From IMG/VR virus record IMGVR_UViG_3300042453_005404, positions 1-64,000 of that record: DNA of 64,000 nt; one strand, given 5' to 3'. Position 1 is the first letter of the stretch; every line of letters starts with the position of its first letter. The notes below the pieces were generated by a model. That model was not told the origin of the DNA and ran no database searches. It saw only the letters and a program-made list of their open reading frames with translations. A program made the position numbers and the translations under genes. Of this stretch, positions 309-54,826 are shown one piece after another.

Positions 309-668
309 ATGATGAAAACCATTAGCCTATACTCCATTCTCTTTGAAGCAGACGATTCCAACTCTATTATTGATCCAAAAGATATGGCCGATGTTGTGAA
401 AAAAGCTGTAGGTGAAGAAACTAAAAAAATAACAGACTTGCTTGTTAAACAAGGAACGCAAGTTCCAACCGCAAGTTTAAGTACCACTGGTGCAAAACCA
501 GCCGTTGGTAGCAAAGAAAGCGGATCTGATAAAAAACTCGATCAGATTGCACAAGCTCAAACAGCAGAAACAACAGCAAACAAAGATCTACAAAAAGATC
601 TAGAAAATATACAATCACAAGTTTCCACACTAACAGCGATGGCAAAGGAAGTTCAGAAGAAAGGCTAG
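309..668 (+). CDS. Hypothetical protein, putative head-internal protein
   Basis: 119-aa ORF with an N-terminal LYSILFE motif followed by low-complexity coiled-coil-like sequence. Confidence 0.6.
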
Positions 669-1559: not shown

Positions 1560-1868
1560 TTATAGAGCCATTGGATCTTCGAAGTCGAATCCGTTATCAG
1601 TAACATGCATGATCCAGCGAAGACTATCATCCAACTCCTCAGAGTCGAGAAATACTCTTTCGATTTCGGCAGGTGTGGTTTTTACTCCCTTTTGACGAGC
1701 AAAGTCCATAACTTCTTTCCAAGACATTTCCCCACCCTCTTCACCAACATTGCCAAACTCATCATGAAGATCATAAATAAAATCTATTAAAATTTTTCTC
1801 TTGATTCCTTCAGTGTTCGTCCAGTGTTCGTCTGCTCCGCAACTGCAACAGCCCTTCGGGGAATGGAT
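1560..1868 (-). pseudogene. Start-less second copy of the domain in 1810..2196, in the +1 frame (frameshifted fusion partner or pseudogene)
   Basis: 102-codon open frame: ...FIYDLHDEFGNVGEEGGEMSWKEVMDFARQKGVKTTPAEIERVF...VTDNGFDFEDPMAL*. It parallels the upstream ORF and has no start codon before the conserved block. Confidence 0.7.
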
Positions 1869-2196
1869 CTACAAAGTCGAATCCAGAGTCAGTAACACCC
1901 ATGATGTAAGCAAGACCGGAGTCCAACATGTCAGAGTGGTTAAATACTCTTTCGAGTTCATCGGGCGTGGTTTTTACTTCTTTTTGACGAGCAAAATCCA
2001 TAACTTCATCCCAAGATACTGATCCACCCTCTTCACCAACATTGCCAAACTCACCGTGAATATCTTCAATAAATCTTGCGATTTTTTCTTCTTTTTCTGG
2101 AGGCATGTTGAGTGCTCCTATACGCTCTTGTTTTCGTTTTTCAACAGATACCGCTTCTTTAATGATTCTTTTTAGTTGACGTACTGTTAATCTCAT
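1810..2196 (-). CDS. Hypothetical protein with N-terminal QLKRIIKEA motif
   Basis: 128-aa ORF; its domain is duplicated immediately downstream. Confidence 0.75.
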   Translation of the reverse strand: MRLTVRQLKRIIKEAVSVEKRKQERIGALNMPPEKEEKIARFIEDIHGEFGNVGEEGGSVSWDEVMDFARQKEVKTTPDELERVFNHSDMLDSGLAYIMGVTDSGFDFVDPFPEGLLQLRSRRTLDEH

Positions 2197-2270: not shown

Positions 2271-3191
2271 TTATCCTTTTTCGCCTTTTGTCCAAGAGAT
2301 ACCCACCTTTGCTAAGATTATCGAAAATTATGCTTTCAATTCTCTAATAAAGGACTCGTAAAGTTTTTTGAGTTGTTTTGTTGTATTTTGAAGATAGTTT
2401 TCATTAACTGCATTAACAAAAAGATTTGCTTGTTTTAATTCATCTAGTGTTTTGATTCCATTGTCAAAGTAAGCAAAAGTCATTGCTTTTTGCATTTTTC
2501 CGTATTTTTCTTTTCTTTTTTCAAATTCTTCTGGTGATTCTTCTTTTTGTTTTCTTGGCTCTCTCACCCAAGCGTTCCACTTTGTATCGTTTTTATGGTG
2601 TGCAAAGCAATCATCACTTTTATCTGGTGTTTGAAATGGTTCAAAATCTAAAGCTTTAGATGTTACATCCGGTCTAGACTCCAAATACTCTGCCCAAATC
2701 CTTGCGGCTGCTGGGCTAACCATACTACGATCTCCAATCAAACTATTTCCAGACTGACCAAGAATTACCAACAAACAATCATATAGCATTGGTCCATAAC
2801 CTTTTGCTACTTCTGACATGCTAACAAACCAAGCATTATGACAATTATAATTGGCTTTGTCATCGTTCTCTTTGCATGATACATAACCCCAAGGCATTAA
2901 TGGTTTATGACTCGGCTCTTCATATCGAGATATTGGTCCGCCTTTTTCAAATTTAGAAAATTTAAAATCTCCGTAATATTTTTTTCTTAATTTATCAGTT
3001 TGACTTTCAATTAATCTACCTGTTTTCAAACTGTAAAAACCAACAAGATAAAAATCTGCTCCTCCAAGATCTTGTTTTTCAAATTTTACTCCAACTTTAA
3101 ATTCATCACCAACGCTGTTGTTAAAAGCAATTAGATCTTTAACTGTTTTTGCTGGCATGATTTAACCTTTTTCACCTTTTGTCCAAGAGAT
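2271..3191. repeat. 30-bp direct repeat pair (2271-2300 and 3162-3191, 28/30 identical) flanking gene 2328..3158
   Basis: ttatcctttttcgccttttgtccaagagat versus ttaacctttttcaccttttgtccaagagat. Confidence 0.85.
2328..3158 (-). CDS. GNAT-like domain protein, related to the 4325-9095 array
   Basis: KGYGPMLYD...LIGDRSMVSPAAARIW aligns with the array motifs FGPLAYQ...LxSDxxLKPASQRVW. GxG(P)xLY resembles the GNAT acetyl-CoA-binding motif A. Confidence 0.55.
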   Translation of the reverse strand: MPAKTVKDLIAFNNSVGDEFKVGVKFEKQDLGGADFYLVGFYSLKTGRLIESQTDKLRKKYYGDFKFSKFEKGGPISRYEEPSHKPLMPWGYVSCKENDDKANYNCHNAWFVSMSEVAKGYGPMLYDCLLVILGQSGNSLIGDRSMVSPAAARIWAEYLESRPDVTSKALDFEPFQTPDKSDDCFAHHKNDTKWNAWVREPRKQKEESPEEFEKRKEKYGKMQKAMTFAYFDNGIKTLDELKQANLFVNAVNENYLQNTTKQLKKLYESFIRELKA

Positions 3192-3452
3192 TCCCATGGC
3201 TGGTGGGTCTTTCAACGTGTCATGTTCTTTGCTACGATAGTAGCCACCTTTGTTAAGATTTTTGTTAATACCTTTGGTTAGTTCTTTATGGTAGCTTGGG
3301 TTGTTGTCATCTTTGGCATGAATAAAAGTATCTGAACCAATACGATCCCCGTGGCCAACGTATTCATAACCCATTGCTTTTACGAGTTTTTTGTTAAAAG
3401 CTGCTTCTAAAATCAGTAGTTTTATTAAGCCATACAAGAATTCTTCATTCAT
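3162..3452 (-). CDS. Hypothetical protein (LLILEAA motif)
   Basis: 96-aa ORF with TAATTA just upstream of the ATG. Confidence 0.65.
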   Translation of the reverse strand: MNEEFLYGLIKLLILEAAFNKKLVKAMGYEYVGHGDRIGSDTFIHAKDDNNPSYHKELTKGINKNLNKGGYYRSKEHDTLKDPPAMGISWTKGEKG

Positions 3453-3962: not shown

Positions 3963-4328
3963 ATGTATTGTATCTCTTCTATTGGTTATGTTCCACATTC
4001 ATTAGCTTTGAAAATATTGAACAGTTCAGAGTTACGTGCAAAAGGCTTCATGGGATGGAGTCAGCCACCCAACGATCATTATGGAATGCTTTTTGTGCAT
4101 GACATAGAACATCCTCAATCTTATTGGATGCATACCGTTCCTTTTGATTTAGATTGTCTTGGATTCGATAAGCATAACAGATTGGTTGAGGTACTGCCTT
4201 TGGAAGCATTTTCTACGGCCTCTAGAAGATTTTCTGTGCCTGTTCGTTATGTTGTTGAAGTAAGAGGAGGTTGGTGTAAAGACCACGGCATAAAAGGCGG
4301 AGAAAAGCTAGTTATAAGGAAACTATGA
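3963..4328 (+). CDS. DUF192-family protein
   Basis: Motifs GMLFV, YWMHTVPFDLDCLGFD and YVVEVRGG. Confidence 0.75.
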   Translation: MYCISSIGYVPHSLALKILNSSELRAKGFMGWSQPPNDHYGMLFVHDIEHPQSYWMHTVPFDLDCLGFDKHNRLVEVLPLEAFSTASRRFSVPVRYVVEVRGGWCKDHGIKGGEKLVIRKL

Positions 4329-5113
4329 AACTATATCAAATCATATACACAAACGAAGCAGCAAGATCGGCAGAAGAGTCTTTGGAAAAAGGAGTTTTTG
4401 CTTATCTTAAACCGGGAACGTATCCAAAAGTTATTCTAATATCTAGAGACAGGCTTTTGCAAGCCATTGATTCCGAGGTGCTGCTGGGGCCGTTGGTACG
4501 GAAAATTGCTGGTCGTGCTGTTGTTGGAGCTGTAGGTTATAACAAAGACTCTTCTGGTGAAGATTTATACAAGGTGGATACAAGTGCTGGAGTTGCTAGT
4601 TTTGGTCCATTGGCTTATCAGCTAGCAATGTACACAATACAACCATCTTGGCTAATGAGCGATAGTTCTCTTAAACCAGCAAGTCATCGTGTTTGGAAAA
4701 ACATGTACAAGCTTTCTGAGCAAGGAGTTTATGAGCGTAAATGGCTTGGAGATTATAACATTGACTTGGTTTCTGAACGGTATATTGGTATCGAAAGTGG
4801 CAAGTTTGCGAGATTCCTCTCCTCCTTACGGTGGATTCGCCTCTCCTCCTTACCTCCTCCAGCCGAAGATTTATTCATAAAATGGGTAAAAGAAAACCAC
4901 CCAGAAGAACCGATAGAAAACTTTGGTCAATTTTGGGCATATCGTAAAACAAGTCATGACCCTAAGATAAAAAACTTATTTGATCAAAGCGAAAAGTTTA
5001 TCGAACAAATGCAAACCGAGCGAAAGATACCAGAAGTTACAACAAGAGAAATAATAGAACGTTCAGCAGCTTTGTTTTTTGGTCGTCTTTATGGTTCTGC
5101 TGCAAGTTATTGA
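4325..5113 (+). CDS. GNAT-like array paralog 1
   Basis: MKLYQIIYTNEAA; RAVVGAV; TSAGVASFGPLAYQLAM; SDSSLKPASHRVWKNMY. Confidence 0.8.
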   Translation: MKLYQIIYTNEAARSAEESLEKGVFAYLKPGTYPKVILISRDRLLQAIDSEVLLGPLVRKIAGRAVVGAVGYNKDSSGEDLYKVDTSAGVASFGPLAYQLAMYTIQPSWLMSDSSLKPASHRVWKNMYKLSEQGVYERKWLGDYNIDLVSERYIGIESGKFARFLSSLRWIRLSSLPPPAEDLFIKWVKENHPEEPIENFGQFWAYRKTSHDPKIKNLFDQSEKFIEQMQTERKIPEVTTREIIERSAALFFGRLYGSAASY

Positions 5114-5125
5114 AAAGATGAACAC

Positions 5126-5914
5126 ATGAAACTTTATCCACTCATATATACCAACGAAGCAGCAAGAACAGCTAGCGAAGCTATAGAAGCTGAACTAGGA
5201 CTTTTCATTTATCCTACCGATGATTCGATAGCTGTTATATTGATTGATTCAGAACGATGTGAAAATATCTTAGCGTCGTATCTTGAAAAAAAAGAAGCTT
5301 ACAAACCTAAAAAAGAATGGTTAACAACAGCCATTGGAAATCGTGCTGTTGTTGGAGGTGTTGGTATAAGACATCCAGATGCTTGGAGAGTTAGTTTTTC
5401 TGTGGCTGTCAGCAAATATGGTCCATTACTTTATGATGCGGCAATGGCAGCGATATACCCAGATTATCTTTGTTCTGATACAGACATTACAGAAGCCGCT
5501 CAAAAAGTTTGGAACAAAATGCTTGAACGTAATGATGTTGAAAAAATACCTGTTACAGAACTTGGTGATGACGTATACATGATGATAAGCACAAGTTTTA
5601 GCGTTGCAGGCTTGACAAGTAAACAAGCAGAAGAAGCAAGAAATTCTATAGGAGATGCAAATTTGGATTTAGAGTGGTTCGAAAACTTTGTCAGCAGCCT
5701 TCCTCCAGAAGATAAAGCCAAGCTTGGCCCGTTTTATGGTTTTCGTAGAAAGGCTGGCAAAGATCTTTCAAAGTATAATACTCTAATTAAAACCAGTGAT
5801 GACATCATTGATATCTTTGCTGGTTCTATGAAGCTTAAACGATTCGATGTTGAAGAAGCAATAGAACAAGCTGCGATACAAATGTTTAAACGCTTTTATT
5901 TCAGGAGAAAATGA
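5126..5914 (+). CDS. GNAT-like array paralog 2 (most divergent)
   Basis: MKLYPLIYTNEAA; NRAVVGGV; KYGPLLYDAAM; SDTDITEAAQKVWNKM. Confidence 0.8.
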   Translation: MKLYPLIYTNEAARTASEAIEAELGLFIYPTDDSIAVILIDSERCENILASYLEKKEAYKPKKEWLTTAIGNRAVVGGVGIRHPDAWRVSFSVAVSKYGPLLYDAAMAAIYPDYLCSDTDITEAAQKVWNKMLERNDVEKIPVTELGDDVYMMISTSFSVAGLTSKQAEEARNSIGDANLDLEWFENFVSSLPPEDKAKLGPFYGFRRKAGKDLSKYNTLIKTSDDIIDIFAGSMKLKRFDVEEAIEQAAIQMFKRFYFRRK

Positions 5915-5918
5915 ACAC

Positions 5919-6746
5919 ATGAAACTATATCCAATCATATACCTTAACGAAGCAGCTCCAACAGCAACCGAAGCTATTGGCAAAAACGTTGCAGCTATCA
6001 CTAGTGACGACTATGCAGATTGGGAATCACCAACCGATCATAGTATCGTTTTGATATCCACAAATAGAGCAATGAGCATAATGCAATCGTTGCCGAAAAA
6101 AGGTTGGGCACCAGAGGAGATAAGCGCCGCAGAAGCTCGTACTATCGGTAAACTCATTGCAAATCGAGCAGTTGTTGGATATGTTGCATACTCTGATAGC
6201 GATGAAAATCTGTGGAAAATCGACTCTAGTGCCGGTGTGGCGAGTTTCGGACCATTGGCATATCAACTAGCGATGTGGTCAACTGGTGGTTGGCTTGAAA
6301 GCGATATTTCTCTCAAACCAGCAAGTCAAAGAGTTTGGCAAAAAATGTATGAACTATCCAATCAAGGTGTATACAAGCGTAAATGGCTTGGTGAATGGAA
6401 CGAAGATCATCCCGCCGAACGTATGCATATTGGTCCTGCTCCCCGAGATTTAGGAGAGTATATAACCAAAGTCGAAAACGGAGAAATAGATTACGAAGAC
6501 GAACAAGCTTTTCTAAGTTGGTTACAAGAAAACAACCTAAAGCCAGAAACTTATGGTTGGCTTTGGGCTTATCAACTAGTCTCTCACGATTCAAACACTC
6601 GCAGTTTGTTTGACAAAGGCAAGCAACTAATCCAAGATTTAAGAGAAATATATCCTCAGTTCACCGAAAAAGATCTTGGTGAGTTGTTTGAAACTGCGGG
6701 CAGAAAGTTTTTTCGTAGACTCTACGGTGGAAAAGCTAGTTATTGA
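5919..6746 (+). CDS. GNAT-like array paralog 3
   Basis: MKLYPIIYLNEAA; NRAVVGYV; SSAGVASFGPLAYQLAM; SDISLKPASQRVWQKMY. Confidence 0.8.
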   Translation: MKLYPIIYLNEAAPTATEAIGKNVAAITSDDYADWESPTDHSIVLISTNRAMSIMQSLPKKGWAPEEISAAEARTIGKLIANRAVVGYVAYSDSDENLWKIDSSAGVASFGPLAYQLAMWSTGGWLESDISLKPASQRVWQKMYELSNQGVYKRKWLGEWNEDHPAERMHIGPAPRDLGEYITKVENGEIDYEDEQAFLSWLQENNLKPETYGWLWAYQLVSHDSNTRSLFDKGKQLIQDLREIYPQFTEKDLGELFETAGRKFFRRLYGGKASY

Positions 6747-6759
6747 TAACAGAAATAAC

Positions 6760-7515
6760 ATGAAACTTTATCCAATCATATACCTTAACGAAGGTATGCG
6801 TACACCAGAAGAAGCGTTGGAAAAAGGTATTGCTGCGATACAAACACCAACCGGTGTCGCCGGAGGTCAGTTTGTAAATCTTGTTTCAAAAAAACGTATG
6901 CTAAATTTGCTAGAAAAAAACAAAACCTTGTTAAACAATCCAACAGAACGCTTAAAGTTGGTGTTTAAAGCTGCCAACCGTGCTGTTGTTGGTAGCGTTA
7001 GTTTTCGATCTACACACGTTCAAGGTGTAACCAAAATCAACACAAGTGCTGCGGTTAATAAATTTGGACCTCTTGCTTATCAGTTAGCAATGCATTATAT
7101 AAAGCCAAGATGGCTTTGTAGCGATACAAGCCTAACAGCTGAATCAGCAAAAGTGTGGTACGAAATGTACGCACGTCCAGAACTCTATGAAAAAAAATGG
7201 ATGGGTGATCTATCAGGAGATTCTACCAAACTCATTAATGATCGATTGAACGCTGATGAAAACAAAGACTATATCGATTTACCCGACGACATGGTAACCG
7301 ACGAAGCGTATATGACACAAGAACTTGGTGACATGTCCAAATATGGATATCTTTATGTTTATCGTTTAGCTAAACCTATTCCTGCATTGCAGGCTGTTTT
7401 CGATCAAGGGGAAGCGTTTCTTGACGAACTCGTTGACAGAGGATTCGACGCTGCTTTAATCAAACAAATCATTAGTGACAGCGGCGATGCATTTTTTGAA
7501 AGGAGATACGATTGA
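6760..7515 (+). CDS. GNAT-like array paralog 4 (start re-called at 6760)
   Basis: The ATG at 6760 gives MKLYPIIYLNEGMRTPEEAL, matching its paralogs; FGPLAYQLAM is present. Confidence 0.8.
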   Translation: MKLYPIIYLNEGMRTPEEALEKGIAAIQTPTGVAGGQFVNLVSKKRMLNLLEKNKTLLNNPTERLKLVFKAANRAVVGSVSFRSTHVQGVTKINTSAAVNKFGPLAYQLAMHYIKPRWLCSDTSLTAESAKVWYEMYARPELYEKKWMGDLSGDSTKLINDRLNADENKDYIDLPDDMVTDEAYMTQELGDMSKYGYLYVYRLAKPIPALQAVFDQGEAFLDELVDRGFDAALIKQIISDSGDAFFERRYD

Positions 7516-8309
7516 AACTATATCCAATCATATATCTCAACGAAGGTATGCGTACACCAGAAGAAGCGTTGTCGAAAGGTGTGGCTGCAATCAAAAAATC
7601 AGCTGGTAGCGATAAAGTTGCAGCAATCGATTTGCTTTCTATTGAGAGAACTTTAAATATCGCAAAAAAACACAAGCCATGGCAGATCGTTGACGGCGAG
7701 CATTTAGCTAAACGTGCATTTGTTGCTTCGATTGTATATGAGTTTGTTAGTGAAGATATCTACAAAATCATTGGCAGCGCAGGAGTTTCAGACTTTGGTC
7801 CATTAGCTTACCAAATGGTAATGCAAGAAATCATGAAGGATGGTGGATGGCTTGCGTCTGATTCAATGCTTAAACCTGCAAGTCAAAGAGTTTGGCAAAA
7901 GATGTATGAGCTTTCCGAACAAGGTGTATACAAACGTAAGTTTTTGGGAGAGGTAAACAAAAAGCATATCAGTATGCGTCAATTGATTATACCATCTGAA
8001 CTTAAATCCATTGTAGGCATTAAAGACGCTATAAGCGACTATTACAAAACAAGCTACAAAATGACAAATGACGGTTTTATAGCTTATTTGGATGCACTAT
8101 CCCTAAAACCACAAACTTATGGTTGGATGTGGGCATACCAACTTGAATCTCCTAACCCAAACATTGACGAGCTTTATAGAAAAGGTGAAGAGTTAGTTGC
8201 GCAAATAAAAAATATAACGGGATTTGACGATAAAGTTACACATGACATGATCGAGGATGCTGGTGAAAAGTTTTTTGATCGTTTATACGGCAGCAAAGCC
8301 AGCGATTGA
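7512..8309 (+). CDS. GNAT-like array paralog 5 (TTG start overlapping the upstream TGA)
   Basis: TTG-KLYPIIYLNEGMRTPEEAL; SAGVSDFGPLAYQMVM; LASDSMLKPASQRVWQKMY. Confidence 0.8.
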   Translation: MKLYPIIYLNEGMRTPEEALSKGVAAIKKSAGSDKVAAIDLLSIERTLNIAKKHKPWQIVDGEHLAKRAFVASIVYEFVSEDIYKIIGSAGVSDFGPLAYQMVMQEIMKDGGWLASDSMLKPASQRVWQKMYELSEQGVYKRKFLGEVNKKHISMRQLIIPSELKSIVGIKDAISDYYKTSYKMTNDGFIAYLDALSLKPQTYGWMWAYQLESPNPNIDELYRKGEELVAQIKNITGFDDKVTHDMIEDAGEKFFDRLYGSKASD

Positions 8310-8324
8310 CACAAGGAAATCTAA

Positions 8325-9095
8325 ATGAAGCTGTACCCCATTATGTATCTTCATGAAGGTATGCGGACACCAGAAGAAGCGTTGGAAAAAGGTATTGCTG
8401 CTATAGCACACAAGTATGCAACCAGCGTTGGGGGTATAGTGTTGCTTTCTACCAAAAGAACGTTAAAGTACGTACAAAAAAATAAAGCATTAGATGGTTT
8501 AGAACAACGAGCAGTAGTTGCATCGATCAACTATAGGCTGATTCAAGGAGATCTATACAAAATCAATTACAGCGCAGGAGTTTCAGACTTTGGTCCATTG
8601 GCATATCAAATGGTAATGCAAGAAATAATGAAAACTAACAATGGATGGTTGGCTTCTGATGAAAATCTTAAGAAAGCCAGCAAAAGAGTTTGGCAAAAGA
8701 TGTATGAGCTTTCTGAACAAGGTGTATACAAGCGCAAATGGTTAGGTGATTGGGATATCGGCGGGGGAGATCGGACACGGCATCCATTCAGCAGACGAAC
8801 ACATTTAGGTCAAGATTCATCGTTGTATTACGAAGGTATGAAAGATAAGAAGTACGATGGTTCTGAAGCTGATTTTTTAAAATACTTAAGCGAACATAAT
8901 GTAGCACCATATGAGTATGGATGGCTTTGGGCTTACCAACTTCAATCATTTAATCCAAAGTTTGAAGAGCTTTATGAAAAAGGTGAAGAGTTACTTTTGC
9001 AAATCGAACAAATCATCAAAGGTGTAAGAATCAATAACGTTCGTAATGTTTTGCTTTCTGGAGAAAACTTCTTTGGTCGTATGTATCACTCATAA
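8325..9095 (+). CDS. GNAT-like array paralog 6
   Basis: MKLYPIMYLHEGMRTPEEAL; SAGVSDFGPLAYQMVM; YGWLWAYQL. Confidence 0.8.
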   Translation: MKLYPIMYLHEGMRTPEEALEKGIAAIAHKYATSVGGIVLLSTKRTLKYVQKNKALDGLEQRAVVASINYRLIQGDLYKINYSAGVSDFGPLAYQMVMQEIMKTNNGWLASDENLKKASKRVWQKMYELSEQGVYKRKWLGDWDIGGGDRTRHPFSRRTHLGQDSSLYYEGMKDKKYDGSEADFLKYLSEHNVAPYEYGWLWAYQLQSFNPKFEELYEKGEELLLQIEQIIKGVRINNVRNVLLSGENFFGRMYHS

Positions 9096-15610: not shown

Positions 15611-16107
15611 AGTAACTCCAAATGGTTTTCATTAATGTCGGTTGTTGCAAAAGCTATGTAGCCCACTTCACCATCACCACGTAGTATTTTTGTATACACT
15701 ATAATCCATTCTATATTTTGTTGTGGTTGCCCTGTAAACACTCCAAACGTTCCCAAATGAATGCCAATCGGTTCATTATATCTAAACTGAGCCCATCCCA
15801 TGCTACCAAAACTGTCGCCTATACCTTCTTCTAGAACAAAAGCTTCTTCTAGTGAAAACGGCGGAAATGACTTCAAAACTTGAATCGCTTGTAATCCGTT
15901 ATATGGTTCGAACATTGGATTGTTAAACCATGGTGTTCGAACCACGTAATCTTTGTATTCCGATTCGATTAGCTTGTTTAGATCATCACATTTCCATCCT
16001 TGTGAGTTTAACGTTACAGACCTTCCTTCAATTCGTGACATGTTTAAAAACTGAAATCCTTTAATGAACGTTCCCGGTTTTAAGTCAAAAAGTTCTTTGG
16101 CCAACAT
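15607..16107 (-). CDS. Hypothetical protein with a C-terminal KILxxDGxVGY beta-barrel-like motif
   Basis: Start re-called at MLAKELF, just after the dut stop; contains YTKILRGDGEVGYI. Confidence 0.6.
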   Translation of the reverse strand: MLAKELFDLKPGTFIKGFQFLNMSRIEGRSVTLNSQGWKCDDLNKLIESEYKDYVVRTPWFNNPMFEPYNGLQAIQVLKSFPPFSLEEAFVLEEGIGDSFGSMGWAQFRYNEPIGIHLGTFGVFTGQPQQNIEWIIVYTKILRGDGEVGYIAFATTDINENHLELL

Positions 16108-16108
16108 G

Positions 16109-16588
16109 TCATGCCCCTGTTGAACCAAAGCCGCCCGCACCTCTGTCCGTAGAAGTTACAACATCAGTCTCAACAAAATCAACTTTATACGTTGGACTGT
16201 TTGCAAATATTTGTTGAATCACCAACTGAGCAACTCGTTCCCCCTGCTTTACTTGATAAGGTTGTTTTGAAAGATTGGCTAGAACAACATTAATCTCTCC
16301 TCGGTAGTTTACATCTACTGTACCCGTAACTGGAAACACGAGCTTTCTAGAAAGACCCGAACGTGAACGTACATCAAGGTAATACGCATTACCATCTGAA
16401 TCTACCAAAGGACAATCTGCCAACTGCAATCCAGTTTTAACCATGGTTACTTCACCGACAGGCAGCAACGTATCTTCTACAGCTGTAATATCAAATCCAG
16501 CATCGCCAAACTCATGTGCGTGTTTTGGCATCGTGGCATTAGGACTAAGCTTCACAAACTTGATAACTAACTCTTTACGACTTGTCAT
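16109..16588 (-). CDS. dut: Trimeric dUTPase
   Basis: AGFDI, RSRSGL, GTVDVNYRGEI, ERVAQLV and RGAGGFGSTG. Confidence 0.96.
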   Translation of the reverse strand: MTSRKELVIKFVKLSPNATMPKHAHEFGDAGFDITAVEDTLLPVGEVTMVKTGLQLADCPLVDSDGNAYYLDVRSRSGLSRKLVFPVTGTVDVNYRGEINVVLANLSKQPYQVKQGERVAQLVIQQIFANSPTYKVDFVETDVVTSTDRGAGGFGSTGA

Positions 16589-16649
16589 GTATCATTACCT
16601 CGTTGATCAACCATAACAAGTGCAAAAGCCAGATATCAAACAAAAACAA

Positions 16650-16679
16650 AAAGGCCGGTTACTTTCGTAACCGGCCTTT
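16650..16679 (-). terminator. Intrinsic terminator after the AAA+ ATPase gene
   Basis: Perfect 13-bp stem aaaggccggttac/gtaaccggccttt. On the minus strand it has a GAAA loop followed by a U-rich tract. Confidence 0.88.
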
Positions 16680-16712
16680 CTGATTGTCTAGGCTGGTCTA
16701 GCCAGCGGGCTC

Positions 16713-18005
16713 TCAACGCTTGCGAGTACGAGCCTTAACAGGGGTTGCAGGAGCAGCGGGAGCCGCAGGAGCAGGTGCCGCAGCCTTGGGAGCAGGAGTG
16801 TTACCAGCAAGCACCCGAACCAGAAGCTCCTCGATATGACCATGCACCTTGAAGGCATTAGCACGGTTAGCATTGAGAGACTTCCAAGAAGCCATGAGAA
16901 CCTCGGCAGGAGCATCCTTCATGTAAGCGCCGAACTGCGCAGCCTCGGAATCAGTCAGAGCATGAGTCTTAAGCTTGTGGTCAAGCTTGCCCATGATATC
17001 GATGAACTTGGCATGACGCTTGGCATCATCCTTGGGAAGACGAGCCTTGGTGCCCTTCCAATCCTTGAGAACATCCTCCGCAGAGATATCGAGGCCACGC
17101 TCCTTGACGAACTTCCAGAAAGCGTTGGCAGCCTCGAAACCAACCATGCTAGCAGCCATGTGGCAGAACACAACATCCTCCGGGGCATCGTAAAGACCCG
17201 ACTGAGTGAGCTCTGCATCAAGGTTACCCCAAGCACGACGGTCAGGGTACTTCTTGTTAGGCTCGCAAGTATCCTTGTACTCAAGGTACTTCTCATTGCT
17301 ACGGATGAACTCCACAAGAGCCTGATTGCAGTGCTCATTAGCCCAATCGAGCCAATCCTGCGTAGTGGGATCGAGATCGACAACAGCGTAACGAGACAGA
17401 GCAGCAGGGTCCATCGGAGTAACGTCATACTGGTCACCGACGTTTACCGCAACCATGATGCGAGTACCATCATGCAGAAGGTTACCATCGAAAGCCTTGC
17501 TATCCGCAAGCTGGAAGGTAGCCTGTTCAACACCCTTGATCGCACGGTTAAGCTCATCGAGGAAGAGCACGCACGGGAACTCGCAAGTAGCCAGAAGCCA
17601 CTCGCAAGCACGGAACACCGTGCCACCACGGTTACCCTCGAAGGGAATACCCGTGATATCACCCTCGGTCATCTGCGACAGACGACGCTCCACAACCGGG
17701 ATACCCATATCGTAATGCCACACGTTGCGAGGCATATCCGCATAAGCAGGATTGCTACCGTTACGCTTCCAGAACGAAGCGATTGCCTTGGCAAAGCCAG
17801 AATCCTTGCCAAGAGCAGCGGTCACCCGCTCGCAGTTACCACGATCCATGTAGAAATCGTGACGAAGTTCACTAGCGATCTGATAGACCACCTGTGACTT
17901 GCCGATACCGTGACGACCACGAAGCATGGTCGCACGATTCGCAGAGAATCGCTTGAAGAGGTTCTTGGTGGACTTGATATCGAGAGTGAGAGCGGAGAGA
18001 GCCAT
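16713..18005 (-). CDS. MoxR-like AAA+ ATPase
   Basis: Walker A GRHGIGKS, Walker B LFLDELNR, MDPAALSRY and YPDRRAW. Confidence 0.85.
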   Translation of the reverse strand: MALSALTLDIKSTKNLFKRFSANRATMLRGRHGIGKSQVVYQIASELRHDFYMDRGNCERVTAALGKDSGFAKAIASFWKRNGSNPAYADMPRNVWHYDMGIPVVERRLSQMTEGDITGIPFEGNRGGTVFRACEWLLATCEFPCVLFLDELNRAIKGVEQATFQLADSKAFDGNLLHDGTRIMVAVNVGDQYDVTPMDPAALSRYAVVDLDPTTQDWLDWANEHCNQALVEFIRSNEKYLEYKDTCEPNKKYPDRRAWGNLDAELTQSGLYDAPEDVVFCHMAASMVGFEAANAFWKFVKERGLDISAEDVLKDWKGTKARLPKDDAKRHAKFIDIMGKLDHKLKTHALTDSEAAQFGAYMKDAPAEVLMASWKSLNANRANAFKVHGHIEELLVRVLAGNTPAPKAAAPAPAAPAAPATPVKARTRKR

Positions 18006-18035
18006 TTGCTTGTTTCCTTTAGCCTTTCTAGAACC

Positions 18036-18064
18036 AGTATATCAGTCAGTTGCGATTTTCTAAA
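18036..18064 (-). promoter_or_regulatory. Early sigma70-type promoter TTTAGA-N17-TATACT
   Basis: Read directly on the minus strand, with an extended -10 TG; lies 30 nt upstream of the AAA+ gene. Confidence 0.75.
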
Positions 18065-18107
18065 ACTTATTTATTTTTTTTTGTTTTTGGCTGAAATACA
18101 GGGGTTT

Positions 18108-18320
18108 TCAGCTGTTTTGAAGTTCAAGCCATTCCCAACCGTTGACCAAATCCTCTTCTGCAAGATTTGTGGCAAATCGAACGGCGTCGTTACGAGCAAG
18201 GGGATCGCAGTTTGTACACACAGAGAACAAAGGCTCCTCGCTGACATAGAAGGTCGATCCTTCGCCAGCTTCTTGACATTTCTCGCAAGTTACTTCTTCC
18301 GGCCAAAAATACTGGAACAC
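18108..18320 (-). CDS. Small putative Zn-finger protein (CEKC...CTNC)
   Basis: GTG start at 18320 with an AGGAG SD 7 nt upstream; two CxxC motifs. Confidence 0.55.
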   Translation of the reverse strand: MFQYFWPEEVTCEKCQEAGEGSTFYVSEEPLFSVCTNCDPLARNDAVRFATNLAEEDLVNGWEWLELQNS

Positions 18321-18333
18321 AGCAATACTCCTT

Positions 18334-19659
18334 TCACGCACGCCTAACAGCCTTGTCTTCCTTGCCCATCTTAACAATCAAGTCACCGGGACGGGCCGCA
18401 GAGATATCACCAGTTTCGGTAATAACCCACATAACCTTGGTACCAACCACGGCACCCATCTTGGGAGCATATCCGTCAGTCATGATGATACATGCACTGT
18501 ACTTACCCTTGCGCTTGCTGTCGTTGAGGTAACGCTGCACGGCATCGAAGTCTGTACCACCGCAGCGGGTACGAGCCCACTTAAAGCTCTGGCCGTTGTT
18601 GACCGACTGCAAAGACTTTTCATCCATCTCGGTATCAAAGTTAATGATATCGATCTTGCCTTCCTTGCTGGCAGCAAAAGTCTCTGCAAGAAACCGACGA
18701 ACATCATCGTCACTAACCGACCCAGATTGATCGATAGCACAGAGAATGTTGGCAATGGTGCTACGCTTGGCTCCCGGCATCATGTACGGAAGACGCTTGT
18801 TGATACGCTTCATGGTGCTGTTACGCTCCATGCTACGAGTGCGACCGATAAACATACGCAGAATGGCCTTCCAATCAAGCTCATTCTTCAGAAGCTTCTC
18901 GATCTGAGAGACAACCTCGGAAGGGATAGAGCCCCACGAAGCACGCTGCTGCGCAGCCTTGGCACCCTTCTCGATCAACTCACGAACCTGCTCACGCATG
19001 ATATCACGAAGCTCGTCGGGCACATCACCCCAACCACCGTGACCGTCGAGAGATTCACCATCCTCGTTGCCAACCTCAAGGGTATACTCACCCTCGTCAT
19101 TGGTCTTGCCGTTTTGCTCGGCATATTCTTCCAAACGAGCCATGTACCAATCGGCACTCTCATGCTTGGGAAAGCTCTTGATAAGAGCCGCAAGCTTGGG
19201 ATCATCCGACTTGGGAGCACGACCGGGCATAAGACAGAAATCGGGAAGCTTGTCGCCGCCGATAATCGAGTTGATGGCAAGATCGGTAGCAACGTTCCAC
19301 AGACGAGAACGCTTGCGATCCGCAACGCTGCGCTCTGCAATATGCATGAACGCAACGTGAAACATCTCATGCATAAGCACACCAATCCGCTGCTTGGTAG
19401 GAAGGGAACGCATGAAATCAGGGTTATATCCCATCTTGATATTACCCTGCTTGTCTGCACAAACGTAGGCAGTATCTACCTTCCAATCCGCAACCTTGGG
19501 AATATGCATAGACATACCTCCAAGAAACGGCTCCTCTTGCATGAGTTGAATGAACTCACGATCAAAACGATATTCCTCGGAGGGAACGTTGGGATCGGGC
19601 TCATGCCGCACGTTGAGAGAAGTGACCTTGTTGCTGGTGTTGTCGTTCTTGGTTTCCAT
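18334..19659 (-). CDS. DUF2201-type metallopeptidase-like plus VWA domain protein (MoxR partner)
   Basis: HEMFH (HExxH), WNVATDLAIN, MIDAS AIDQSGS, GGTDF and IIMTDG. Confidence 0.88.
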   Translation of the reverse strand: METKNDNTSNKVTSLNVRHEPDPNVPSEEYRFDREFIQLMQEEPFLGGMSMHIPKVADWKVDTAYVCADKQGNIKMGYNPDFMRSLPTKQRIGVLMHEMFHVAFMHIAERSVADRKRSRLWNVATDLAINSIIGGDKLPDFCLMPGRAPKSDDPKLAALIKSFPKHESADWYMARLEEYAEQNGKTNDEGEYTLEVGNEDGESLDGHGGWGDVPDELRDIMREQVRELIEKGAKAAQQRASWGSIPSEVVSQIEKLLKNELDWKAILRMFIGRTRSMERNSTMKRINKRLPYMMPGAKRSTIANILCAIDQSGSVSDDDVRRFLAETFAASKEGKIDIINFDTEMDEKSLQSVNNGQSFKWARTRCGGTDFDAVQRYLNDSKRKGKYSACIIMTDGYAPKMGAVVGTKVMWVITETGDISAARPGDLIVKMGKEDKAVRRA

Positions 19660-19665
19660 ACTATT

Positions 19666-19694
19666 ATAATATCATGTATAACTAGGAATCTAAA
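19666..19694 (-). promoter_or_regulatory. Early promoter TTTAGA-N17-TATTAT, predicted leaderless
   Basis: The -10 ends 6 nt before ATG 19659. Confidence 0.75.
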
Positions 19695-19703
19695 ACAAAT
19701 AAA

Positions 19704-19742
19704 AACCCCGGCAAAACAAGGGTTTCCTGTTAAGCCGGGGTT
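19704..19742 (-). terminator. Probable terminator after hsp20
   Basis: Stem aaccccggc/gccggggtt, followed by a T-rich tract on the minus strand. Confidence 0.65.
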
Positions 19743-19765
19743 GTTTAAGGTGTTAAAGATTGATA

Positions 19766-20113
19766 TCAGTCTACTGGAATGTTACGAGGTTGTTCTGATG
19801 CTTTGATTGGACAAAGCACAGTAAGAATTCCATCTTTGCATGAAGCGGAAATGGCGGATATATCTACTTTGCTTCCAAGCCGATATGTAAGTGTTTTCTT
19901 GTTTTTTTCTGGGCGTTGTAGGGTAATCACAAGTTGTGATCCTTTTGTTGCCAAGGATACATTTTCTCGACTATAACCGGGAACTTCTATGGTTAGTTTG
20001 CATGATCCATCTGCTTCATGAGTTACTTCATCTTGCAAGTTGTACAAGTGAGATTCCCATGACGAGTTACGAGGAAAATTAAAGATATCGAAATATGGTG
20101 CTAGTGTTGACAT
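19766..20113 (-). CDS. Small heat-shock protein (Hsp20 / alpha-crystallin domain)
   Basis: IEVPGYSRENV and ISASCKDGILTV. Start re-called at MSTLAPYF with an AGGAG SD. Confidence 0.85.
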   Translation of the reverse strand: MSTLAPYFDIFNFPRNSSWESHLYNLQDEVTHEADGSCKLTIEVPGYSRENVSLATKGSQLVITLQRPEKNKKTLTYRLGSKVDISAISASCKDGILTVLCPIKASEQPRNIPVD

Positions 20114-31860: not shown

Positions 31861-31872
31861 AAAGGTACAAAA

Positions 31873-32070
31873 ATGTTATCAAACAAAGATCTTCGTGAAC
31901 AAGTTTTTTCAAATCAAATAATCAAAAGTCTTTTAGAACAAATCGAAGACAAAAACGAAAGAGAAAAAACCGTTATAGCAATTAATGGAATGCTTGATCA
32001 GCTTCAAGGTAAATTCAATGGTCTTTCGCAAGCATACGAAGAAATATCTAAAAAACAAGGTTCTAAATAG
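31873..32070 (+). CDS. Hypothetical protein
   Basis: 65-aa ORF between the tape-measure-like and baseplate genes. Confidence 0.6.
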   Translation: MLSNKDLREQVFSNQIIKSLLEQIEDKNEREKTVIAINGMLDQLQGKFNGLSQAYEEISKKQGSK

Positions 32071-32089
32071 TTATCCATCAAGGTAACTC

Positions 32090-35000: not shown

Positions 35001-35551
35001 ATGACAATGTTTTTCTTCCTTATACGTTTTTAAACTCAAACTTAGACAAGCCTAGAACTTTGGCCAAATTCGATGCAAGAATTACAGCAGAAACAGCAGC
35101 GAGAAATGCAAGGAATCAAGAACGAGCCTTACTCGACCCAGTAAAGTTTTATAATCGAGATTTGAATCCTGTGATGAAAGCTTTTCATTCTTCTGGTGGT
35201 AAGGGTCTTGCTGGTGTTATAACAAATTTTAAAGTGGATTATGGAGAAGCGAAAGGAAATTGGGGTATTGACAGCAGCAACTCGTTGCGAGCACCTATGT
35301 TTGTTACAATCAATTTAACAATGGCTGTGATTCATGATATTACACCCGGCCTAGATGCCAAGGGTGTTATGATGGCTCCAATTTGGCCTGTTGGCAACAT
35401 GTCGAACTACTTCATGAAAGATTCGCCTAATCGAAATCAGGAAGGAAGGGTGGTGCCTTCAATAGCAGTAGATTCTGGTGAAGGTTTAACTGACAACAAC
35501 TACTTTGATGTTAAAAACAAGGTAATGTACTATAAACGTACAAACAGATAA
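32090..35551 (+). CDS. Large baseplate / tail-tube-initiator-like structural protein
   Basis: PFYIHDLRTNEILSFHAFL...YGRMDKVQIYKGTTRNVSVNF...PVIRLRLGDLY resembles contractile-tail tube-initiator domains. Confidence 0.6.
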   Translation: MPPIVPPPSELLSAPAPEQSTTNIIQRPGPQTNAEQAPLAPSPIPSLSRRLTIYYQNKGDAPVVPTIDNEIDIAQPVLNQFAEYVVNRSQVNDVPINATQPNYIDKIANAKVEFNSVPTPSYTNDPIISTPDMLGVHYKANNGTGLRNFSINVYQKDINQENAKLHEANINRILLSTRGHNSEPNNQFVTPDVTQNKNDNRITLGSYFYKNASNLSNGVNYVSGSYVRSQPNTATSAPPMTIEQMKNIGLNIMFEAVQGRAGLDFAIRSNDAGDIAEAEARMVLPSEQRIGKRVSLGRFTPAFQIKKLTGAEKPNNSNFIDNTDDVQSYGSQYNVYSQFDSLISLGQIALCVAMILAYVLLLNTIVAFIHIRDTREGVNLADLNGNQRRRLLGSSILQKNSGVYPSSQTSGTDFLTQTSGFTELVGTNGLLPYTRYGHEYSLNAGIQEFFGFSFLGGSLETGITGIQQLANSSLKVLTENGRLNVILREILRSGISLVEDSSVDFTGAASIAGIGNLLKKISTLKIIRFIGVLMSMGDRVRFETEIRRAASLERGVASAEANSRDDPNFTPDDSTSFGANVSYIDNLNGVLRSNFISKSRISVNNTGIIWSNTSAGMAKLPLYQNNNKSSFAGAAGINSEFGSRWSDIDLPVNQPSFSESNIFGAPTISDEEVNNGRISPDHVREIEKSLEADFMPFYIHDLRTNEILSFHAFLEDANEDFNVEYTAQDGYGRMDKVQIYKGTTRNVSVNFKMVAMNPQDHDMMWYKINSLAMMIYPQWTQGRKVSIGQTYNFIQAFSQIPGATPVIRLRLGDLYKSNYSKMAVARLFGINTLEDYSVGNVTDRSSAQTLQENQPATTDIGRRRAALTSSEAINKNNVDNIFALFDDLVLVNLPTGTVESSPPSRRGRGRGRNTQNNQNIRYAAKFVQQQEVLLSNDGTSLEGITVNVVQSFIVSDVNDLSSTTSVTGINNDNVFLPYTFLNSNLDKPRTLAKFDARITAETAARNARNQERALLDPVKFYNRDLNPVMKAFHSSGGKGLAGVITNFKVDYGEAKGNWGIDSSNSLRAPMFVTINLTMAVIHDITPGLDAKGVMMAPIWPVGNMSNYFMKDSPNRNQEGRVVPSIAVDSGEGLTDNNYFDVKNKVMYYKRTNR

Positions 35552-35561
35552 GAGATTTATC

Positions 35562-35855: not shown

Positions 35856-35898
35856 GAAAAACCTGCCCTCTGCACTTATAATTTCTGGGATAAACAAC

Positions 35899-42078: not shown

Positions 42079-42107
42079 TTGACTTTTGATTGCTGCTATG
42101 TTATGTT
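42079..42107 (+). promoter_or_regulatory. Sigma70-like promoter TTGACT-N17-TATGTT upstream of recA
   Basis: Spacing read directly; an AAGGAG SD precedes ATG 42133. Confidence 0.5.
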
Positions 42108-54148: not shown

Positions 54149-54826
54149 CTACTTCCTTCTAAAAAAGTCTGTCACTCTCTGGAGCATACCTTGGTTTTGT
54201 GATGGTGCTGGTGGGGTTGTTGCAGCAACATTTCCCGCTGCTGGTCGTGCTGGAATTGTTGTCGCCGCAGTTGGCGCAGAGCTTGTTTGGGGTGAAGAAG
54301 CTGGAGGCCGTGCGGATCGTTGAGGTTGAGATGGAGGAGTAAAAATACGTGTTATATCTTCGTCAGAAAGTCCTCTGCCCTTCAGAAATTTGATATAATC
54401 TTCTCGATCTTTTTCCTGATAATATTTTTTCTTTTCTTCTGGAGACATATCAGGAGCAGATGGAGTTGTTGAATCCAATGGAGGGCGACGACGTAGGGGA
54501 GATGGTGGCCGAGGTGTTTCCATTTTTCCAAAATCCCCTTGTCTTTCTGGAATTTTACCACCAATAAAATTGGCAAGAGTTTTGATATTGCTAGCTGCGT
54601 TACTTGCGTCTTCTGCATCTTGTTTTGTTGGAGCAGCTTGTTTAACCAAATGCTCGATATTATTGATAAGTTCTTTAATTTCTTTTTGTGAGCTGTTTAT
54701 AACCTCTGGAGAAGATCGACTAATTTTGTTGGAGGGCGAAGGCGCTAAATTGGGTTTGTTGGTTGCCAACCGAGCTTTTAAGTCTGGTGGTTTTGGGCCT
54801 TCAAAAAGTATGTCATATAACTTCAT
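54149..54826 (-). CDS. Pro-rich protein with an MKLYDILFE leader, putative head-internal
   Basis: Start re-called at 54826; TATTTA upstream. Confidence 0.65.
   Translation of the reverse strand: MKLYDILFEGPKPPDLKARLATNKPNLAPSPSNKISRSSPEVINSSQKEIKELINNIEHLVKQAAPTKQDAEDASNAASNIKTLANFIGGKIPERQGDFGKMETPRPPSPLRRRPPLDSTTPSAPDMSPEEKKKYYQEKDREDYIKFLKGRGLSDEDITRIFTPPSQPQRSARPPASSPQTSSAPTAATTIPARPAAGNVAATTPPAPSQNQGMLQRVTDFFRRK

What the first reader, a model, noticed from the sequence alone, without database searches (positions are those of the whole stretch)
4325..9095. Six-gene tandem array of divergent GNAT-like proteins with a shared MKLYPIIYxNE leader
Seen: six co-oriented 250-275 aa paralogs with conserved blocks (RAVVG, SAGVxxFGPLAYQ, WLxSDxxLKPASQRVW, YKRKWLG, YGWLWAYQL, FFxRLYG) separated by highly divergent stretches. 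DNA blocks are shared patchily: gaaggtatgcg...gaagaagcgttg in copies 4-6, and agcgcaggagtttcagactttggtccatt in copies 5-6. This points to mosaic exchange. Established: GxGxxL is the GNAT acetyl-CoA loop, and phage GNATs can act on host proteins (anti-CRISPR AcrVA5, LUZ19 Rac). Inference: this may be a diversifying set of capsid-packaged, injected acyltransferases against different host targets.
Basis: partly seen in the sequence, partly recalled or inferred. Interest (0 to 1): 0.72.

Follow-up and report, generated by a model that had tools for sequence, protein, structure and literature searches.

The report
Leader-tagged GNAT-like cassette array in phage
An uncultured freshwater T4-like giant phage carries six shuffled copies of a previously undescribed acetyltransferase-like protein, each starting with a short tag that closely resembles the signal phage T4 uses to load proteins into its head and inject them into the host.

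Summary
Six co-oriented paralogs (251-275 aa, 27-49% identity) fill window 4325-9095, and each starts with MKLYxIIYxNE. They hit no Pfam or PHROG family and no cultured phage, but more than 400 metagenomic relatives exist.

Two high-confidence AlphaFold models (pLDDT 91 and 93) match GNAT acyltransferases almost exclusively, though only at modest scores (Z 6.3-7.2). The six copies have lost the first glycine of the GNAT G-x-G loop. Cofactor binding is untested.

The main new result concerns the leader:
- It resembles the T4 capsid targeting sequence MKTYQEFIAE.
- The genome encodes T4-type portal, gp21 prohead protease and gp23 capsid protein.
- The same leader heads at least 19 ORFs with unrelated bodies, including a NUDIX hydrolase and a proline-rich protein.
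- It ends in an L-x-E motif, the T4 gp21 cleavage pattern.

Related phages keep the flanking genes at 75-98% identity but carry 1-6 cassettes of at least 8 subtypes in different orders. Homology breakpoints fall at the ends of the leader-coding segments.

Best reading: head-packaged, protease-processed, ejected GNAT-fold proteins in a hyperplastic cassette locus. Packaging, cleavage and enzyme activity are inferred, not shown.

The parts
3963..4328 (+). DUF192 gene, first gene of the operon. Its stop overlaps the start of copy 1 (ATGA).
   Evidence: Pfam PF02643, E 1.3e-16. It precedes the array in every related locus at 38-98% aa identity. In L014/L015 it is fused in frame to a family copy through ...SLSDILFEGPK.
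4325..5113 (+). Copy 1, 262 aa. Leader MKLYQIIYTNE is encoded by 4325-4357.
   Evidence: Homology with relative L006 (98% through DUF192) stops at 4362, 5 nt past the leader. This copy has no close subtype partner in the tree.
5126..5914 (+). Copy 2, 262 aa, the most divergent copy (27-35% identity to the others). Leader MKLYPLIYTNE.
   Evidence: It groups with L007_c1 and L006_c5, which sit at other positions in their arrays.
5919..6746 (+). Copy 3, 275 aa. Leader MKLYPIIYLNE. This is the copy that was modelled.
   Evidence: AF2 model pLDDT 91.2 with residues 1-10 disordered. GNAT-type fold hits. It is 89% identical to L006_c1. A 91% DNA block shared with L006 starts exactly at 5919.
6760..7515 (+). 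Copy 4, 251 aa. Leader MKLYPIIYLNE.
   Evidence: It is 93% identical to L006_c2. Its first 30 codons show excess identical codons with copy 5: 18/23 against 26/64 elsewhere, p 0.003.
7512..8309 (+). Copy 5, 265 aa, TTG start overlapping the stop of copy 4. Leader (M)KLYPIIYLNE.
   Evidence: The DNA block shared with L006 ends at 7545, the end of this leader. Copies 5 and 6 are sister duplicates specific to this phage.
8325..9095 (+). Copy 6, 256 aa. Leader MKLYPIMYLHE.
   Evidence: It is 49% identical to copy 5. Synteny with relatives resumes at 9099.
2328..3158 (-). Leaderless distant paralog, 276 aa. It keeps the G-Y-G-P-M-L-Y-D loop.
   Evidence: BLASTP to copy 2, E 3e-6 over the core motif. 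It is conserved at the same position in L008, L009, L011 and L012 at 46-51% identity.
54149..54826 (-). Unrelated proline-rich basic protein (pI 9.9) with the same kind of leader, MKLYDILFE.
   Evidence: Its body has no homology to the array.
309..668 (+). Small protein with a displaced leader variant, [13 protein letters not shown].
   Evidence: It is conserved in L008 and L011 at 38-40% identity. Assignment as a leader is tentative.
3162..3452 (-). A 96-aa conserved neighbour with a second kind of N-terminal leader, ...LIKLLILE|AA.
   Evidence: It is 55-84% identical in relatives. The pattern is shared with genome ORFs at 142966, 144338 and 190466. Tentative.

Best explanation
The six genes are cassettes of a previously unannotated, divergent GNAT-fold family. 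Each is fused to an 11-residue N-terminal propeptide that works like the T4 capsid targeting sequence.

Proposed mechanism:
1. The operon (DUF192 plus six cassettes) is transcribed against the surrounding early-type genes.
2. The leader, with Tyr4 and a hydrophobic 6-8 stretch, docks each protein into the scaffolding core of the prohead.
3. The phage's gp21-type serine protease cuts after the Glu of the terminal L-x-E (LNE, or LFE in other leader-bearing genes).
4. The roughly 27-30 kDa mature proteins stay in the head and are ejected with the DNA.
5. In the host they bind or acylate targets at the very start of infection.

The locus evolves by swapping whole cassettes through recombination at the conserved leader-coding sequence.

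Shown here: the paralogy, the fold class, the modular leader, the T4-type head genes, and the cassette turnover with breakpoints at leaders.

Inferred: packaging, cleavage, ejection, acyl-CoA use and the nature of the targets.
For: (1) Resemblance to the T4 signal.
- T4 IPII and IPIII start MKTYQEFIAE|A, read from AF158101.
- The literature gives this as the 10-aa CTS. Residues 4 and 7 serve targeting; residues 8 and 10 serve processing (PMC8442874; PMC9026906).
- The array leader MKLYPIIYLNE|A/G shares M, K, Tyr4, a hydrophobic stretch and a terminal (L/I)-x-E followed by a small residue.

(2) T4-type head genes in the 260-kb genome.
- Portal E 5e-66, Peptidase_S77 E 4e-28, gp23 E 9e-77.
- The protease is 32% identical to T4 gp21. 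His and Ser align with T4 His85 and Ser140.

(3) The leader is modular.
- At least 19 ORFs start with MKL[YFS]x[IL][IL][FY](E or xNE) at a start codon.
- Their bodies include a NUDIX hydrolase (E 1e-18), a pair with an RGEGLGKAMY motif, a proline-rich protein and several orphans.
- BLAST and hhalign find only the leader in common.
- The DNA pattern gives 19 hits against 1 in the control. Related records give 6 vs 0 and 3 vs 0.
- Synonymous sites differ between leaders, so selection acts on the peptide.

(4) The leader is disordered in both models. pLDDT is below 50 for residues 1-10 and 1-8.

(5) Distant family members in other phages carry a different, longer leader that also ends L-D-E|A-A. 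The Glu is nearly invariant.

(6) GNAT-type fold.

(7) The family core also occurs inside large multidomain proteins, next to GNAT, HNH and zeta-toxin domains. Iyer et al. predict that such proteins are delivered with the DNA (PMC5512222).

(8) Hyperplastic locus.
- Flanking genes are 75-98% identical, while arrays hold 1-6 copies of at least 8 subtypes in different orders.
- Window-versus-L006 homology breaks at 4362, 5919 and 7545, all leader boundaries.
- Other strains diverge right after the leader.
Against: - No virion proteomics exists and the phage is uncultured.
- The array lies about 180 kb from the head module, among thymidylate synthase, RNR and helicase genes.
- No T4 late-promoter consensus TATAAATA lies upstream.
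- Copies 1 and 2 end in T-N-E, not L/I-x-E.
- The mature proteins are not basic like T4 IPI-III (pI 5.0-8.9).
- GNAT similarity is modest: Z below 8, Foldseek E at best about 1e-3, and no sequence-profile match.
- The six copies lack the first Gly of the G-x-G pyrophosphate loop, so they may not bind acyl-CoA.
- The CoA docking job was not run by the tool.
Confidence: 0.55

Rival explanations
1. The proteins are packaged through the leader but are not enzymes. They would be pseudo-GNAT binding proteins, acting as inhibitors or decoys of host defence proteins like T4 IPI*, or as dispensable filler of the scaffolding core.
For: - The six copies lost the first Gly of the G-x-G loop, which relatives keep.
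- No sequence-level GNAT signal exists.
- T4 internal proteins with the same kind of leader are non-enzymatic, and IPI* is a restriction inhibitor (PMC3012670).
- Surface regions between the conserved blocks are highly divergent, as expected for binding specificities.
Against: - The residues invariant across 62 homologs (G111, P112, Y115, S128, D129, W140, M143 in copy 3) lie on the segment that corresponds to GNAT beta4-alpha3-beta5-alpha4, the cofactor and catalytic region (secondary structure).
- This pattern suggests a conserved pocket rather than a variable interface.
Confidence: 0.2
2. The proteins are ordinary cytoplasmic phage enzymes that are not packaged. The shared N-terminus would serve another role, such as translation efficiency, oligomerisation, turnover, or targeting to a non-capsid site.
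For: - The array sits in an early-type nucleotide-metabolism neighbourhood: thyA, RNR, DnaB, FEN.
- No T4 late promoter is present.
- ATG-AAA starts are common in well-expressed genes.
Against: - Conservation extends through residues 3-11 with varying codons.
- The leader is unstructured in the models.
- The leader ends in the L-x-E pattern cut by T4 gp21 (PMC9026906) and resembles the T4 CTS.
- Unrelated leaders on distant homologs also end in L-x-E|AA.
- The operon runs opposite to its early-type neighbours.
Confidence: 0.15
3. The proteins are nucleotide- or DNA-modifying acyltransferases, like Mom-type GNATs. They would work with the adjacent thymidylate synthase, RNR, DUF192 and PAP2 genes to modify phage DNA.
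For: - Conserved synteny thyA - DUF192 - array - PAP2 - RNR.
- GNAT-family DNA modifiers are reported in T4-related jumbo phages (PMC7824862).
Against: - Six or more interchangeable, rapidly turning-over subtypes do not fit a fixed biosynthetic pathway.
- Copy number ranges from 1 to 6 among close relatives.
- This reading does not explain the leader shared with NUDIX and proline-rich proteins.
Confidence: 0.05

Closest known systems
T4 internal proteins IPI, IPII, IPIII and Alt (CTS-bearing, gp21-processed, ejected head proteins)
   Same: - A short N-terminal leader with M-K-x-Y, a hydrophobic stretch and (I/L)-x-E before a small residue.
- The same leader sits on unrelated proteins.
- T4-type portal, protease and capsid genes are present.
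- The loci are variable between related phages.
- Like Alt, the cargo has an enzyme fold.
   Different: - The leader is 9-11 residues with a different sequence (MKLYxILFE or MKLYPIIYLNE).
- The cargo is 27-30 kDa, not basic, and GNAT-like, rather than small basic proteins or an ADP-ribosyltransferase.
- At least 19 leader-bearing genes occur, against about 6 in T4.
- The copies form tandem arrays of paralogs.
- No experimental evidence exists.
GNAT domains of polyvalent proteins, and solo phage GNATs predicted to be capsid-deployed (Iyer et al. 2017, PMC5512222; for example Mycobacterium phage Alice gp113)
   Same: - A GNAT-fold module is predicted to travel with the DNA into the host.
- The family core also occurs inside 550-1530-aa multidomain proteins with GNAT, HNH and zeta-toxin domains.
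- AFDB neighbour A0A7J4UN01 is named a large polyvalent protein-associated domain.
   Different: - Those GNATs are RimI-like and are recognised by Pfam. This family is not.
- Here delivery would use a cleavable leader on solo proteins, not fusion into a giant polypeptide.
Phage GNAT effectors Rac (LUZ19/phiKMV) and AcrVA5
   Same: Phage-encoded GNAT-fold proteins that modify host proteins early in infection.
   Different: - Those are canonical GNATs made after infection and are not known to be packaged.
- No sequence similarity to them was detected here.
- No target is known for this family.
Ejection-protein paralog families of giant phages such as SPN3US and phiKZ, processed by a gp21-like protease (PMC5694885, PMC7411985)
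   Same: A jumbo phage carries many head-internal proteins in paralog families, trimmed by a T4-like prohead protease.
   Different: - Those phages are a different lineage with different cleavage motifs and longer propeptides.
- Their paralogs are not GNAT-like.
- They are not arranged as leader-delimited shuffled cassettes.

Membership tests
GNAT superfamily (acyl-CoA N-acyltransferase fold) | Mixed alpha/beta fold with the order beta4 - alpha3 - beta5 - alpha4 - beta6 and a C-terminal beta7. | tested here: met
   - Copy 3 model: VIA Z up to 6.3, with the top 38 chains all from the GNAT superfamily.
- Short paralog model: Z up to 7.2, with 67 chains at Z >= 5, nearly all GNAT. Foldseek gives probability 1.0 at E 1e-3.
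- Scores are modest (Z below 8), so this is fold-level support only.
GNAT superfamily (acyl-CoA N-acyltransferase fold) | Motif A, the pyrophosphate loop Q/R-x-x-G-x-G/A between beta4 and alpha3. | tested here: not met
   - The six copies have [SKD]-[FY]-G-P-L-x-Y with a single Gly.
- The leaderless paralog at 2328-3158, the short paralog and most distant relatives keep G-Y-G-P. The loop is therefore ancestral in the family and degenerate in the array.
GNAT superfamily (acyl-CoA N-acyltransferase fold) | Match to curated sequence profiles (Pfam clan Acetyltrans). | tested here: not met
   - No Pfam hit at E <= 1 for the six copies, nor for 10 distant relatives.
- hhalign to a canonical GNAT domain gave probability 0.3%.
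- Indirect support only: ESM Atlas neighbours have 15-50% of members with PF00583.
GNAT superfamily (acyl-CoA N-acyltransferase fold) | Binds acyl-CoA and transfers the acyl group. | not testable with these tools
   The protein-plus-CoA job was not folded by the tool.
T4-type CTS-bearing head internal proteins | N-terminal leader of about 10 residues with an aromatic at position 4, a hydrophobic core, and (I/L)-x-E at its end. | tested here: met
   - MKLYPIIYLNE compared with T4 MKTYQEFIAE.
- Copies 1 and 2 end in T-N-E, which departs at P3.
T4-type CTS-bearing head internal proteins | The same leader is attached to unrelated proteins of one phage. | tested here: met
   At least 19 ORFs fall in about 10 body families. 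The DNA pattern gives 19 hits against 1 in the control.
T4-type CTS-bearing head internal proteins | The phage has a gp21-type prohead protease and a T4-type head. | tested here: met
   PF03420 E 4e-28, portal E 5e-66, gp23 E 9e-77. Positions aligned to T4 gp21 His85 and Ser140 are conserved. That these are the catalytic residues is from memory.
T4-type CTS-bearing head internal proteins | Found in virions, with the leader removed. | not testable with these tools
   The phage is uncultured and no proteome is available.
T4-type CTS-bearing head internal proteins | Small, highly basic proteins (IPI-III type). | tested here: not met
   The mature proteins are 240-264 aa with pI 5.0-8.9. They are closer in kind to Alt, a packaged enzyme.

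The most novel reading that the evidence does not exclude
This phage lineage runs a leader-delimited cassette system. One short coding segment would serve both as the address label that loads proteins into the head and as the recombination linker that lets phages swap ejected effectors. That would yield a repertoire of about 20 pre-made enzymes (GNAT-like, NUDIX and others). The six GNAT-like cassettes would each acylate or block a different host defence or takeover target in the first seconds of infection.
Probability: 0.3. Interest if true: 0.78.

Novelty: new variant of a known kind. Interest (0 to 1): 0.62.

Why it matters
If correct, a simple sequence rule (an MKLY-type leader ending in L-x-E) reads out the whole set of proteins that an uncultured, widespread freshwater jumbo phage injects with its DNA.

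It assigns a role to a protein family of more than 400 clusters that has no annotation. It also extends the T4 capsid-targeting principle far outside the T-even phages, to enzyme cargo.

The leader-bounded breakpoints give a concrete mechanism for how such effector sets are reshuffled between phages. The leader may also be useful as a packaging tag.

Tried and rejected
- Pfam and PHROGs on the six proteins found nothing. Pfam on 10 distant relatives also found nothing.
- blastn and tblastn against 50,697 phage records gave no match for the array or for copy 3.
- A profile search of PDB sequences gave only chance hits.
- hhalign of the family profile against a canonical GNAT domain gave no match. 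Against the RGEGLGK pair, only the leader aligned.
- Complex prediction with CoA was counted but not folded, so it gives no evidence either way.
- The T4 late promoter TATAAATA has one site in 64 kb, fewer than chance, and none near the operon. TATATA-like elements upstream of DUF192 and some head genes were seen but are too weak in AT-rich spacers to use.
- Sigma-70 and terminator scans found nothing above chance.
- Gene conversion within genes is marginal. Long exact runs coincide with the most conserved peptide blocks. The codon-identity excess in the first 30 codons is significant only for pairs 4-5, 1-3 and 4-6.
- The read laying joints between paralogs mostly sit on shared 31-mers or have short sides. 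They may be assembly artefacts.
- An artefact or chance explanation for the repeat was rejected, given the E-values and conservation in 11 related loci.

Full report
**The observation**

Window 4325-9095 holds six co-oriented ORFs of 251-275 aa. Spacers run from -4 to 15 nt. The array is preceded by a DUF192 gene (3963-4328) whose stop overlaps the first start codon. No promoter-like or terminator-like site exceeds chance inside the array, so this is one operon on the strand opposite its neighbours.

With the first 14 residues removed, the six bodies still match each other at 27-49% identity, with E-values from 1e-8 to 6e-69. The alignment has 29 invariant columns. The conserved peptide blocks are real, but several occur in only some of the copies.

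**The genome**

The window is the first 64 kb of a 260,466-bp viral record, estimated about 70% complete. The record encodes:
- a T4-type portal, E 5e-66;
- a Peptidase_S77 (gp21) prohead protease, E 4e-28;
- a gp23-type major capsid protein, E 9e-77.

The protease is 32% identical to T4 gp21. Residues aligned with T4 His85 and Ser140 are conserved; that these are the catalytic residues is from memory.

The capsid protein is only 33-43% identical to any cultured phage. The nearest are Microcystis phage Mel-JY01 and Flavobacterium phage immuto. The array sequence occurs in lake, reservoir and other freshwater metagenomes from many studies. This is an uncultured freshwater jumbo phage of the T4 superfamily.

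**The protein family**

None of the six proteins hits Pfam at E <= 1, or PHROGs. tblastn finds no copy in 50,697 phage records. In metagenomic protein sets the profile finds 106 clusters by word search and 434 representatives by full HMMER. All are unnamed.

Fold evidence:
- An AlphaFold model of copy 3, built on 62 homologs, has pLDDT 91. A model of the 203-aa paralog at genome 137961-138572, built on 37 distant homologs, has pLDDT 93.
- Both models match GNAT-superfamily structures almost exclusively. VIA Z reaches 6.3 and 7.2, with 67 chains at Z >= 5 for the short model.
- Foldseek gives probability 1.0 for NAT9, a mycobacterial protein acetyltransferase, KKT23 and NatD, at E about 1e-3.
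- ESM Atlas neighbours, by language-model features and by shape, are viral clusters in which 15-50% of members carry PF00583.

These scores are modest, and no sequence-profile link to canonical GNATs was found. I therefore call it a divergent GNAT-fold family, not a demonstrated acetyltransferase.

Conserved positions:
- The secondary-structure order around the conserved core is strand - loop - helix - strand - loop - helix - strand. This is the GNAT beta4-alpha3-beta5-alpha4-beta6 unit.
- The residues invariant across 62 homologs (G111, P112, Y115, S128, D129, W140, M143 in copy 3) lie on this unit. That they line a cofactor pocket is inference.
- Most relatives, and the leaderless paralog at 2328-3158, have G-Y-G-P in the beta4-alpha3 loop. 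This fits the G-x-G of GNAT motif A. The six array copies have only [FY]-G-P.

**The leader**

All six copies begin MKLYxIIYxNE. In both models the first 8-10 residues are disordered.

A scan of the whole genome found at least 19 ORFs that start, at a start codon, with MKL[YFS]x[IL][IL][FY] followed by E or xNE. They are:
- the six array genes;
- a proline-rich basic protein in the window (54149-54826);
- thirteen genes clustered at genome 133.9-144.3 kb.

The cluster includes:
- a NUDIX hydrolase, E 1e-18;
- a pair with an RGEGLGKAMY motif;
- a trio homologous to the array family, hhalign probability 95.6%;
- the 203-aa family member;
- several orphans.

Between these groups only the leader aligns. 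Codons differ among the leaders, so the peptide is what is conserved. A degenerate DNA pattern for the leader gives 19 hits in this genome against 1 for the reversed control. Fragments of related phages give 6 vs 0 and 3 vs 0.

**Comparison with T4**

T4 IPII and IPIII start MKTYQEFIAE followed by Ala, read directly from AF158101. This decapeptide is the T4 capsid targeting sequence:
- It is sufficient to load foreign proteins into the head.
- gp21 removes it.
- Residues 4 and 7 matter for targeting; residues 8 and 10 matter for processing (PMC8442874; PMC9026906; PMC3012670).

The leaders here share M-K-x-Tyr4, a hydrophobic stretch, and a terminal L-x-E (LFE or LNE) before a small residue.

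Two further observations point the same way:
- This phage's capsid protein has L-L-E and L-N-E motifs in the stretch that aligns with the T4 gp23 propeptide. One candidate maturation site is SMLNE|N. This is suggestive only.
- Distant family members from other phages carry a different, longer N-terminal helix that nevertheless ends L-D-E|A-A. The Glu is nearly invariant. Across lineages, then, the family is joined to its N-terminal extension by a motif that fits the T4 gp21 cleavage pattern.

Together these make head targeting and proteolytic trimming the best explanation for the leader. Neither has been observed.

**Locus dynamics**

Eleven related viral contigs keep the order thyA - leaderless paralog - two small ORFs - DUF192 - array - a 191-aa ORF - (PAP2) - RNR. 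Flanking proteins are 75-98% identical. The arrays, however, hold 1, 2, 4 or 6 copies.

A tree of 31 copies resolves at least eight subtypes shared between phages. They occur in different orders and combinations. Only copies 5 and 6 are a duplication specific to this phage.

DNA comparison with the closest relative, L006, shows where the homology breaks:
- 98% identity runs through DUF192 and stops at 4362, 5 nt past the first leader.
- A 91% block starts exactly at the start codon of copy 3 (5919) and ends at 7545, the end of the leader of copy 5.
- Synteny resumes at 9099, just after copy 6.

Contigs from other lakes diverge immediately after the leader and then encode other MKLY-type copies.

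Patchy conversion inside genes is only marginally supported. From memory, unverified here: a similar role of the conserved leader in swapping internal-protein genes was proposed for T-even phages by Repoila and colleagues in 1994.

**Weighing the explanations**

Points against packaging:
- The locus is far from the head genes and sits in an early-type neighbourhood.
- No T4 late promoter is present.
- Copies 1 and 2 end in T-N-E.
- The mature proteins are not basic.

The orientation against the neighbouring genes and the Alt precedent, a packaged enzyme, soften the first and last points.

Whether the proteins are active acyltransferases or binding proteins on a GNAT scaffold is open. The degenerate loop favours the second reading; the conserved core favours the first.

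A role in DNA modification is unlikely, given the interchangeable subtypes and variable copy number.

**Novelty**

The principle is known from T4: a cleavable capsid-targeting leader on diverse ejected proteins, in variable loci. GNAT modules delivered with phage DNA have been predicted (PMC5512222; PMC7824862).

What is new:
- the protein family itself;
- its organisation as a leader-delimited cassette array;
- the size of the leader-tagged gene set;
- its occurrence in a distant, uncultured freshwater lineage.

No paper in the library combines a capsid targeting sequence with an acetyltransferase. I rate it a new variant of a known kind.

Noticed in passing
Genome G000 133905-144282 (locus L004 3906-14283): A second cluster of 13 leader-bearing genes on both strands. 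It includes a NUDIX hydrolase (136087-136518), a pair with the canonical-looking RGEGLGKAMY motif (134715, 135397), a trio related to the array family (139231, 140007, 140858), a 203-aa family member (137961) and a 336-aa orphan (136954).
   Followed up: partly
Window 1810-2196 (-), window 3162-3452 (-); genome 100826 (-), 141673 (-), 142966 (+), 144338 (+), 190466 (+): A second kind of N-terminal leader, an amphipathic stretch ...[LIV]K.[IL][IV]...[LIV]LE followed by A or G. It occurs on a zeta-toxin-like kinase (PF06414, E 5e-15), on an ORF inside the head module, and on other ORFs. It resembles the long leader ending LDE|AA on distant family members in other phages.
   Followed up: partly
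L014 7464-8582 and L015 2423-3541: In two more distant relatives, DUF192 is fused in frame to a single family copy. The junction keeps ...SLSDILFEGPK, an internal copy of the leader core. A 667-aa DUF192 fusion also appears in the protein library (P0114).
   Followed up: partly
L011 3781-5367 and L012 529-2115: The thymidylate synthase gene of two relatives is split into two pieces (aa 1-108 and 117-284) about 760 nt apart. This looks like an intron or homing-element insertion. The window's copy (665-1519) is uninterrupted.
   Followed up: no
Window 16000-20000: GC content rises to 0.48-0.50 against about 0.39 elsewhere. The stretch holds an AAA ATPase (16713-18005) and a DUF2201 metallopeptidase/VWA-like protein (18334-19659). 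This may be a recent acquisition.
   Followed up: no
Window 42079-43902: The RecA-like protein is 607 aa, about twice the usual length. It has a weak intein-splicing hit at residues 309-345.
   Followed up: no
Window 26335-39249: Three very large ORFs (1841, 1153 and 1116 aa) have no significant Pfam family.
   Followed up: no
Window 39284-40408, 48525-49559, 56973-57977: A family A DNA polymerase fragment-like ORF (not the family B enzyme of T4), an MnmA-type tRNA 2-thiouridylase, and a GMP reductase/IMPDH-family gene. This is an unusual metabolic load for a T4-type phage.
   Followed up: no
Genome 223393-223569 (+): A 58-aa ORF starts MTKLYNILFE, the leader shifted by one residue. It may be a very small leader-tagged peptide.
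   Followed up: no
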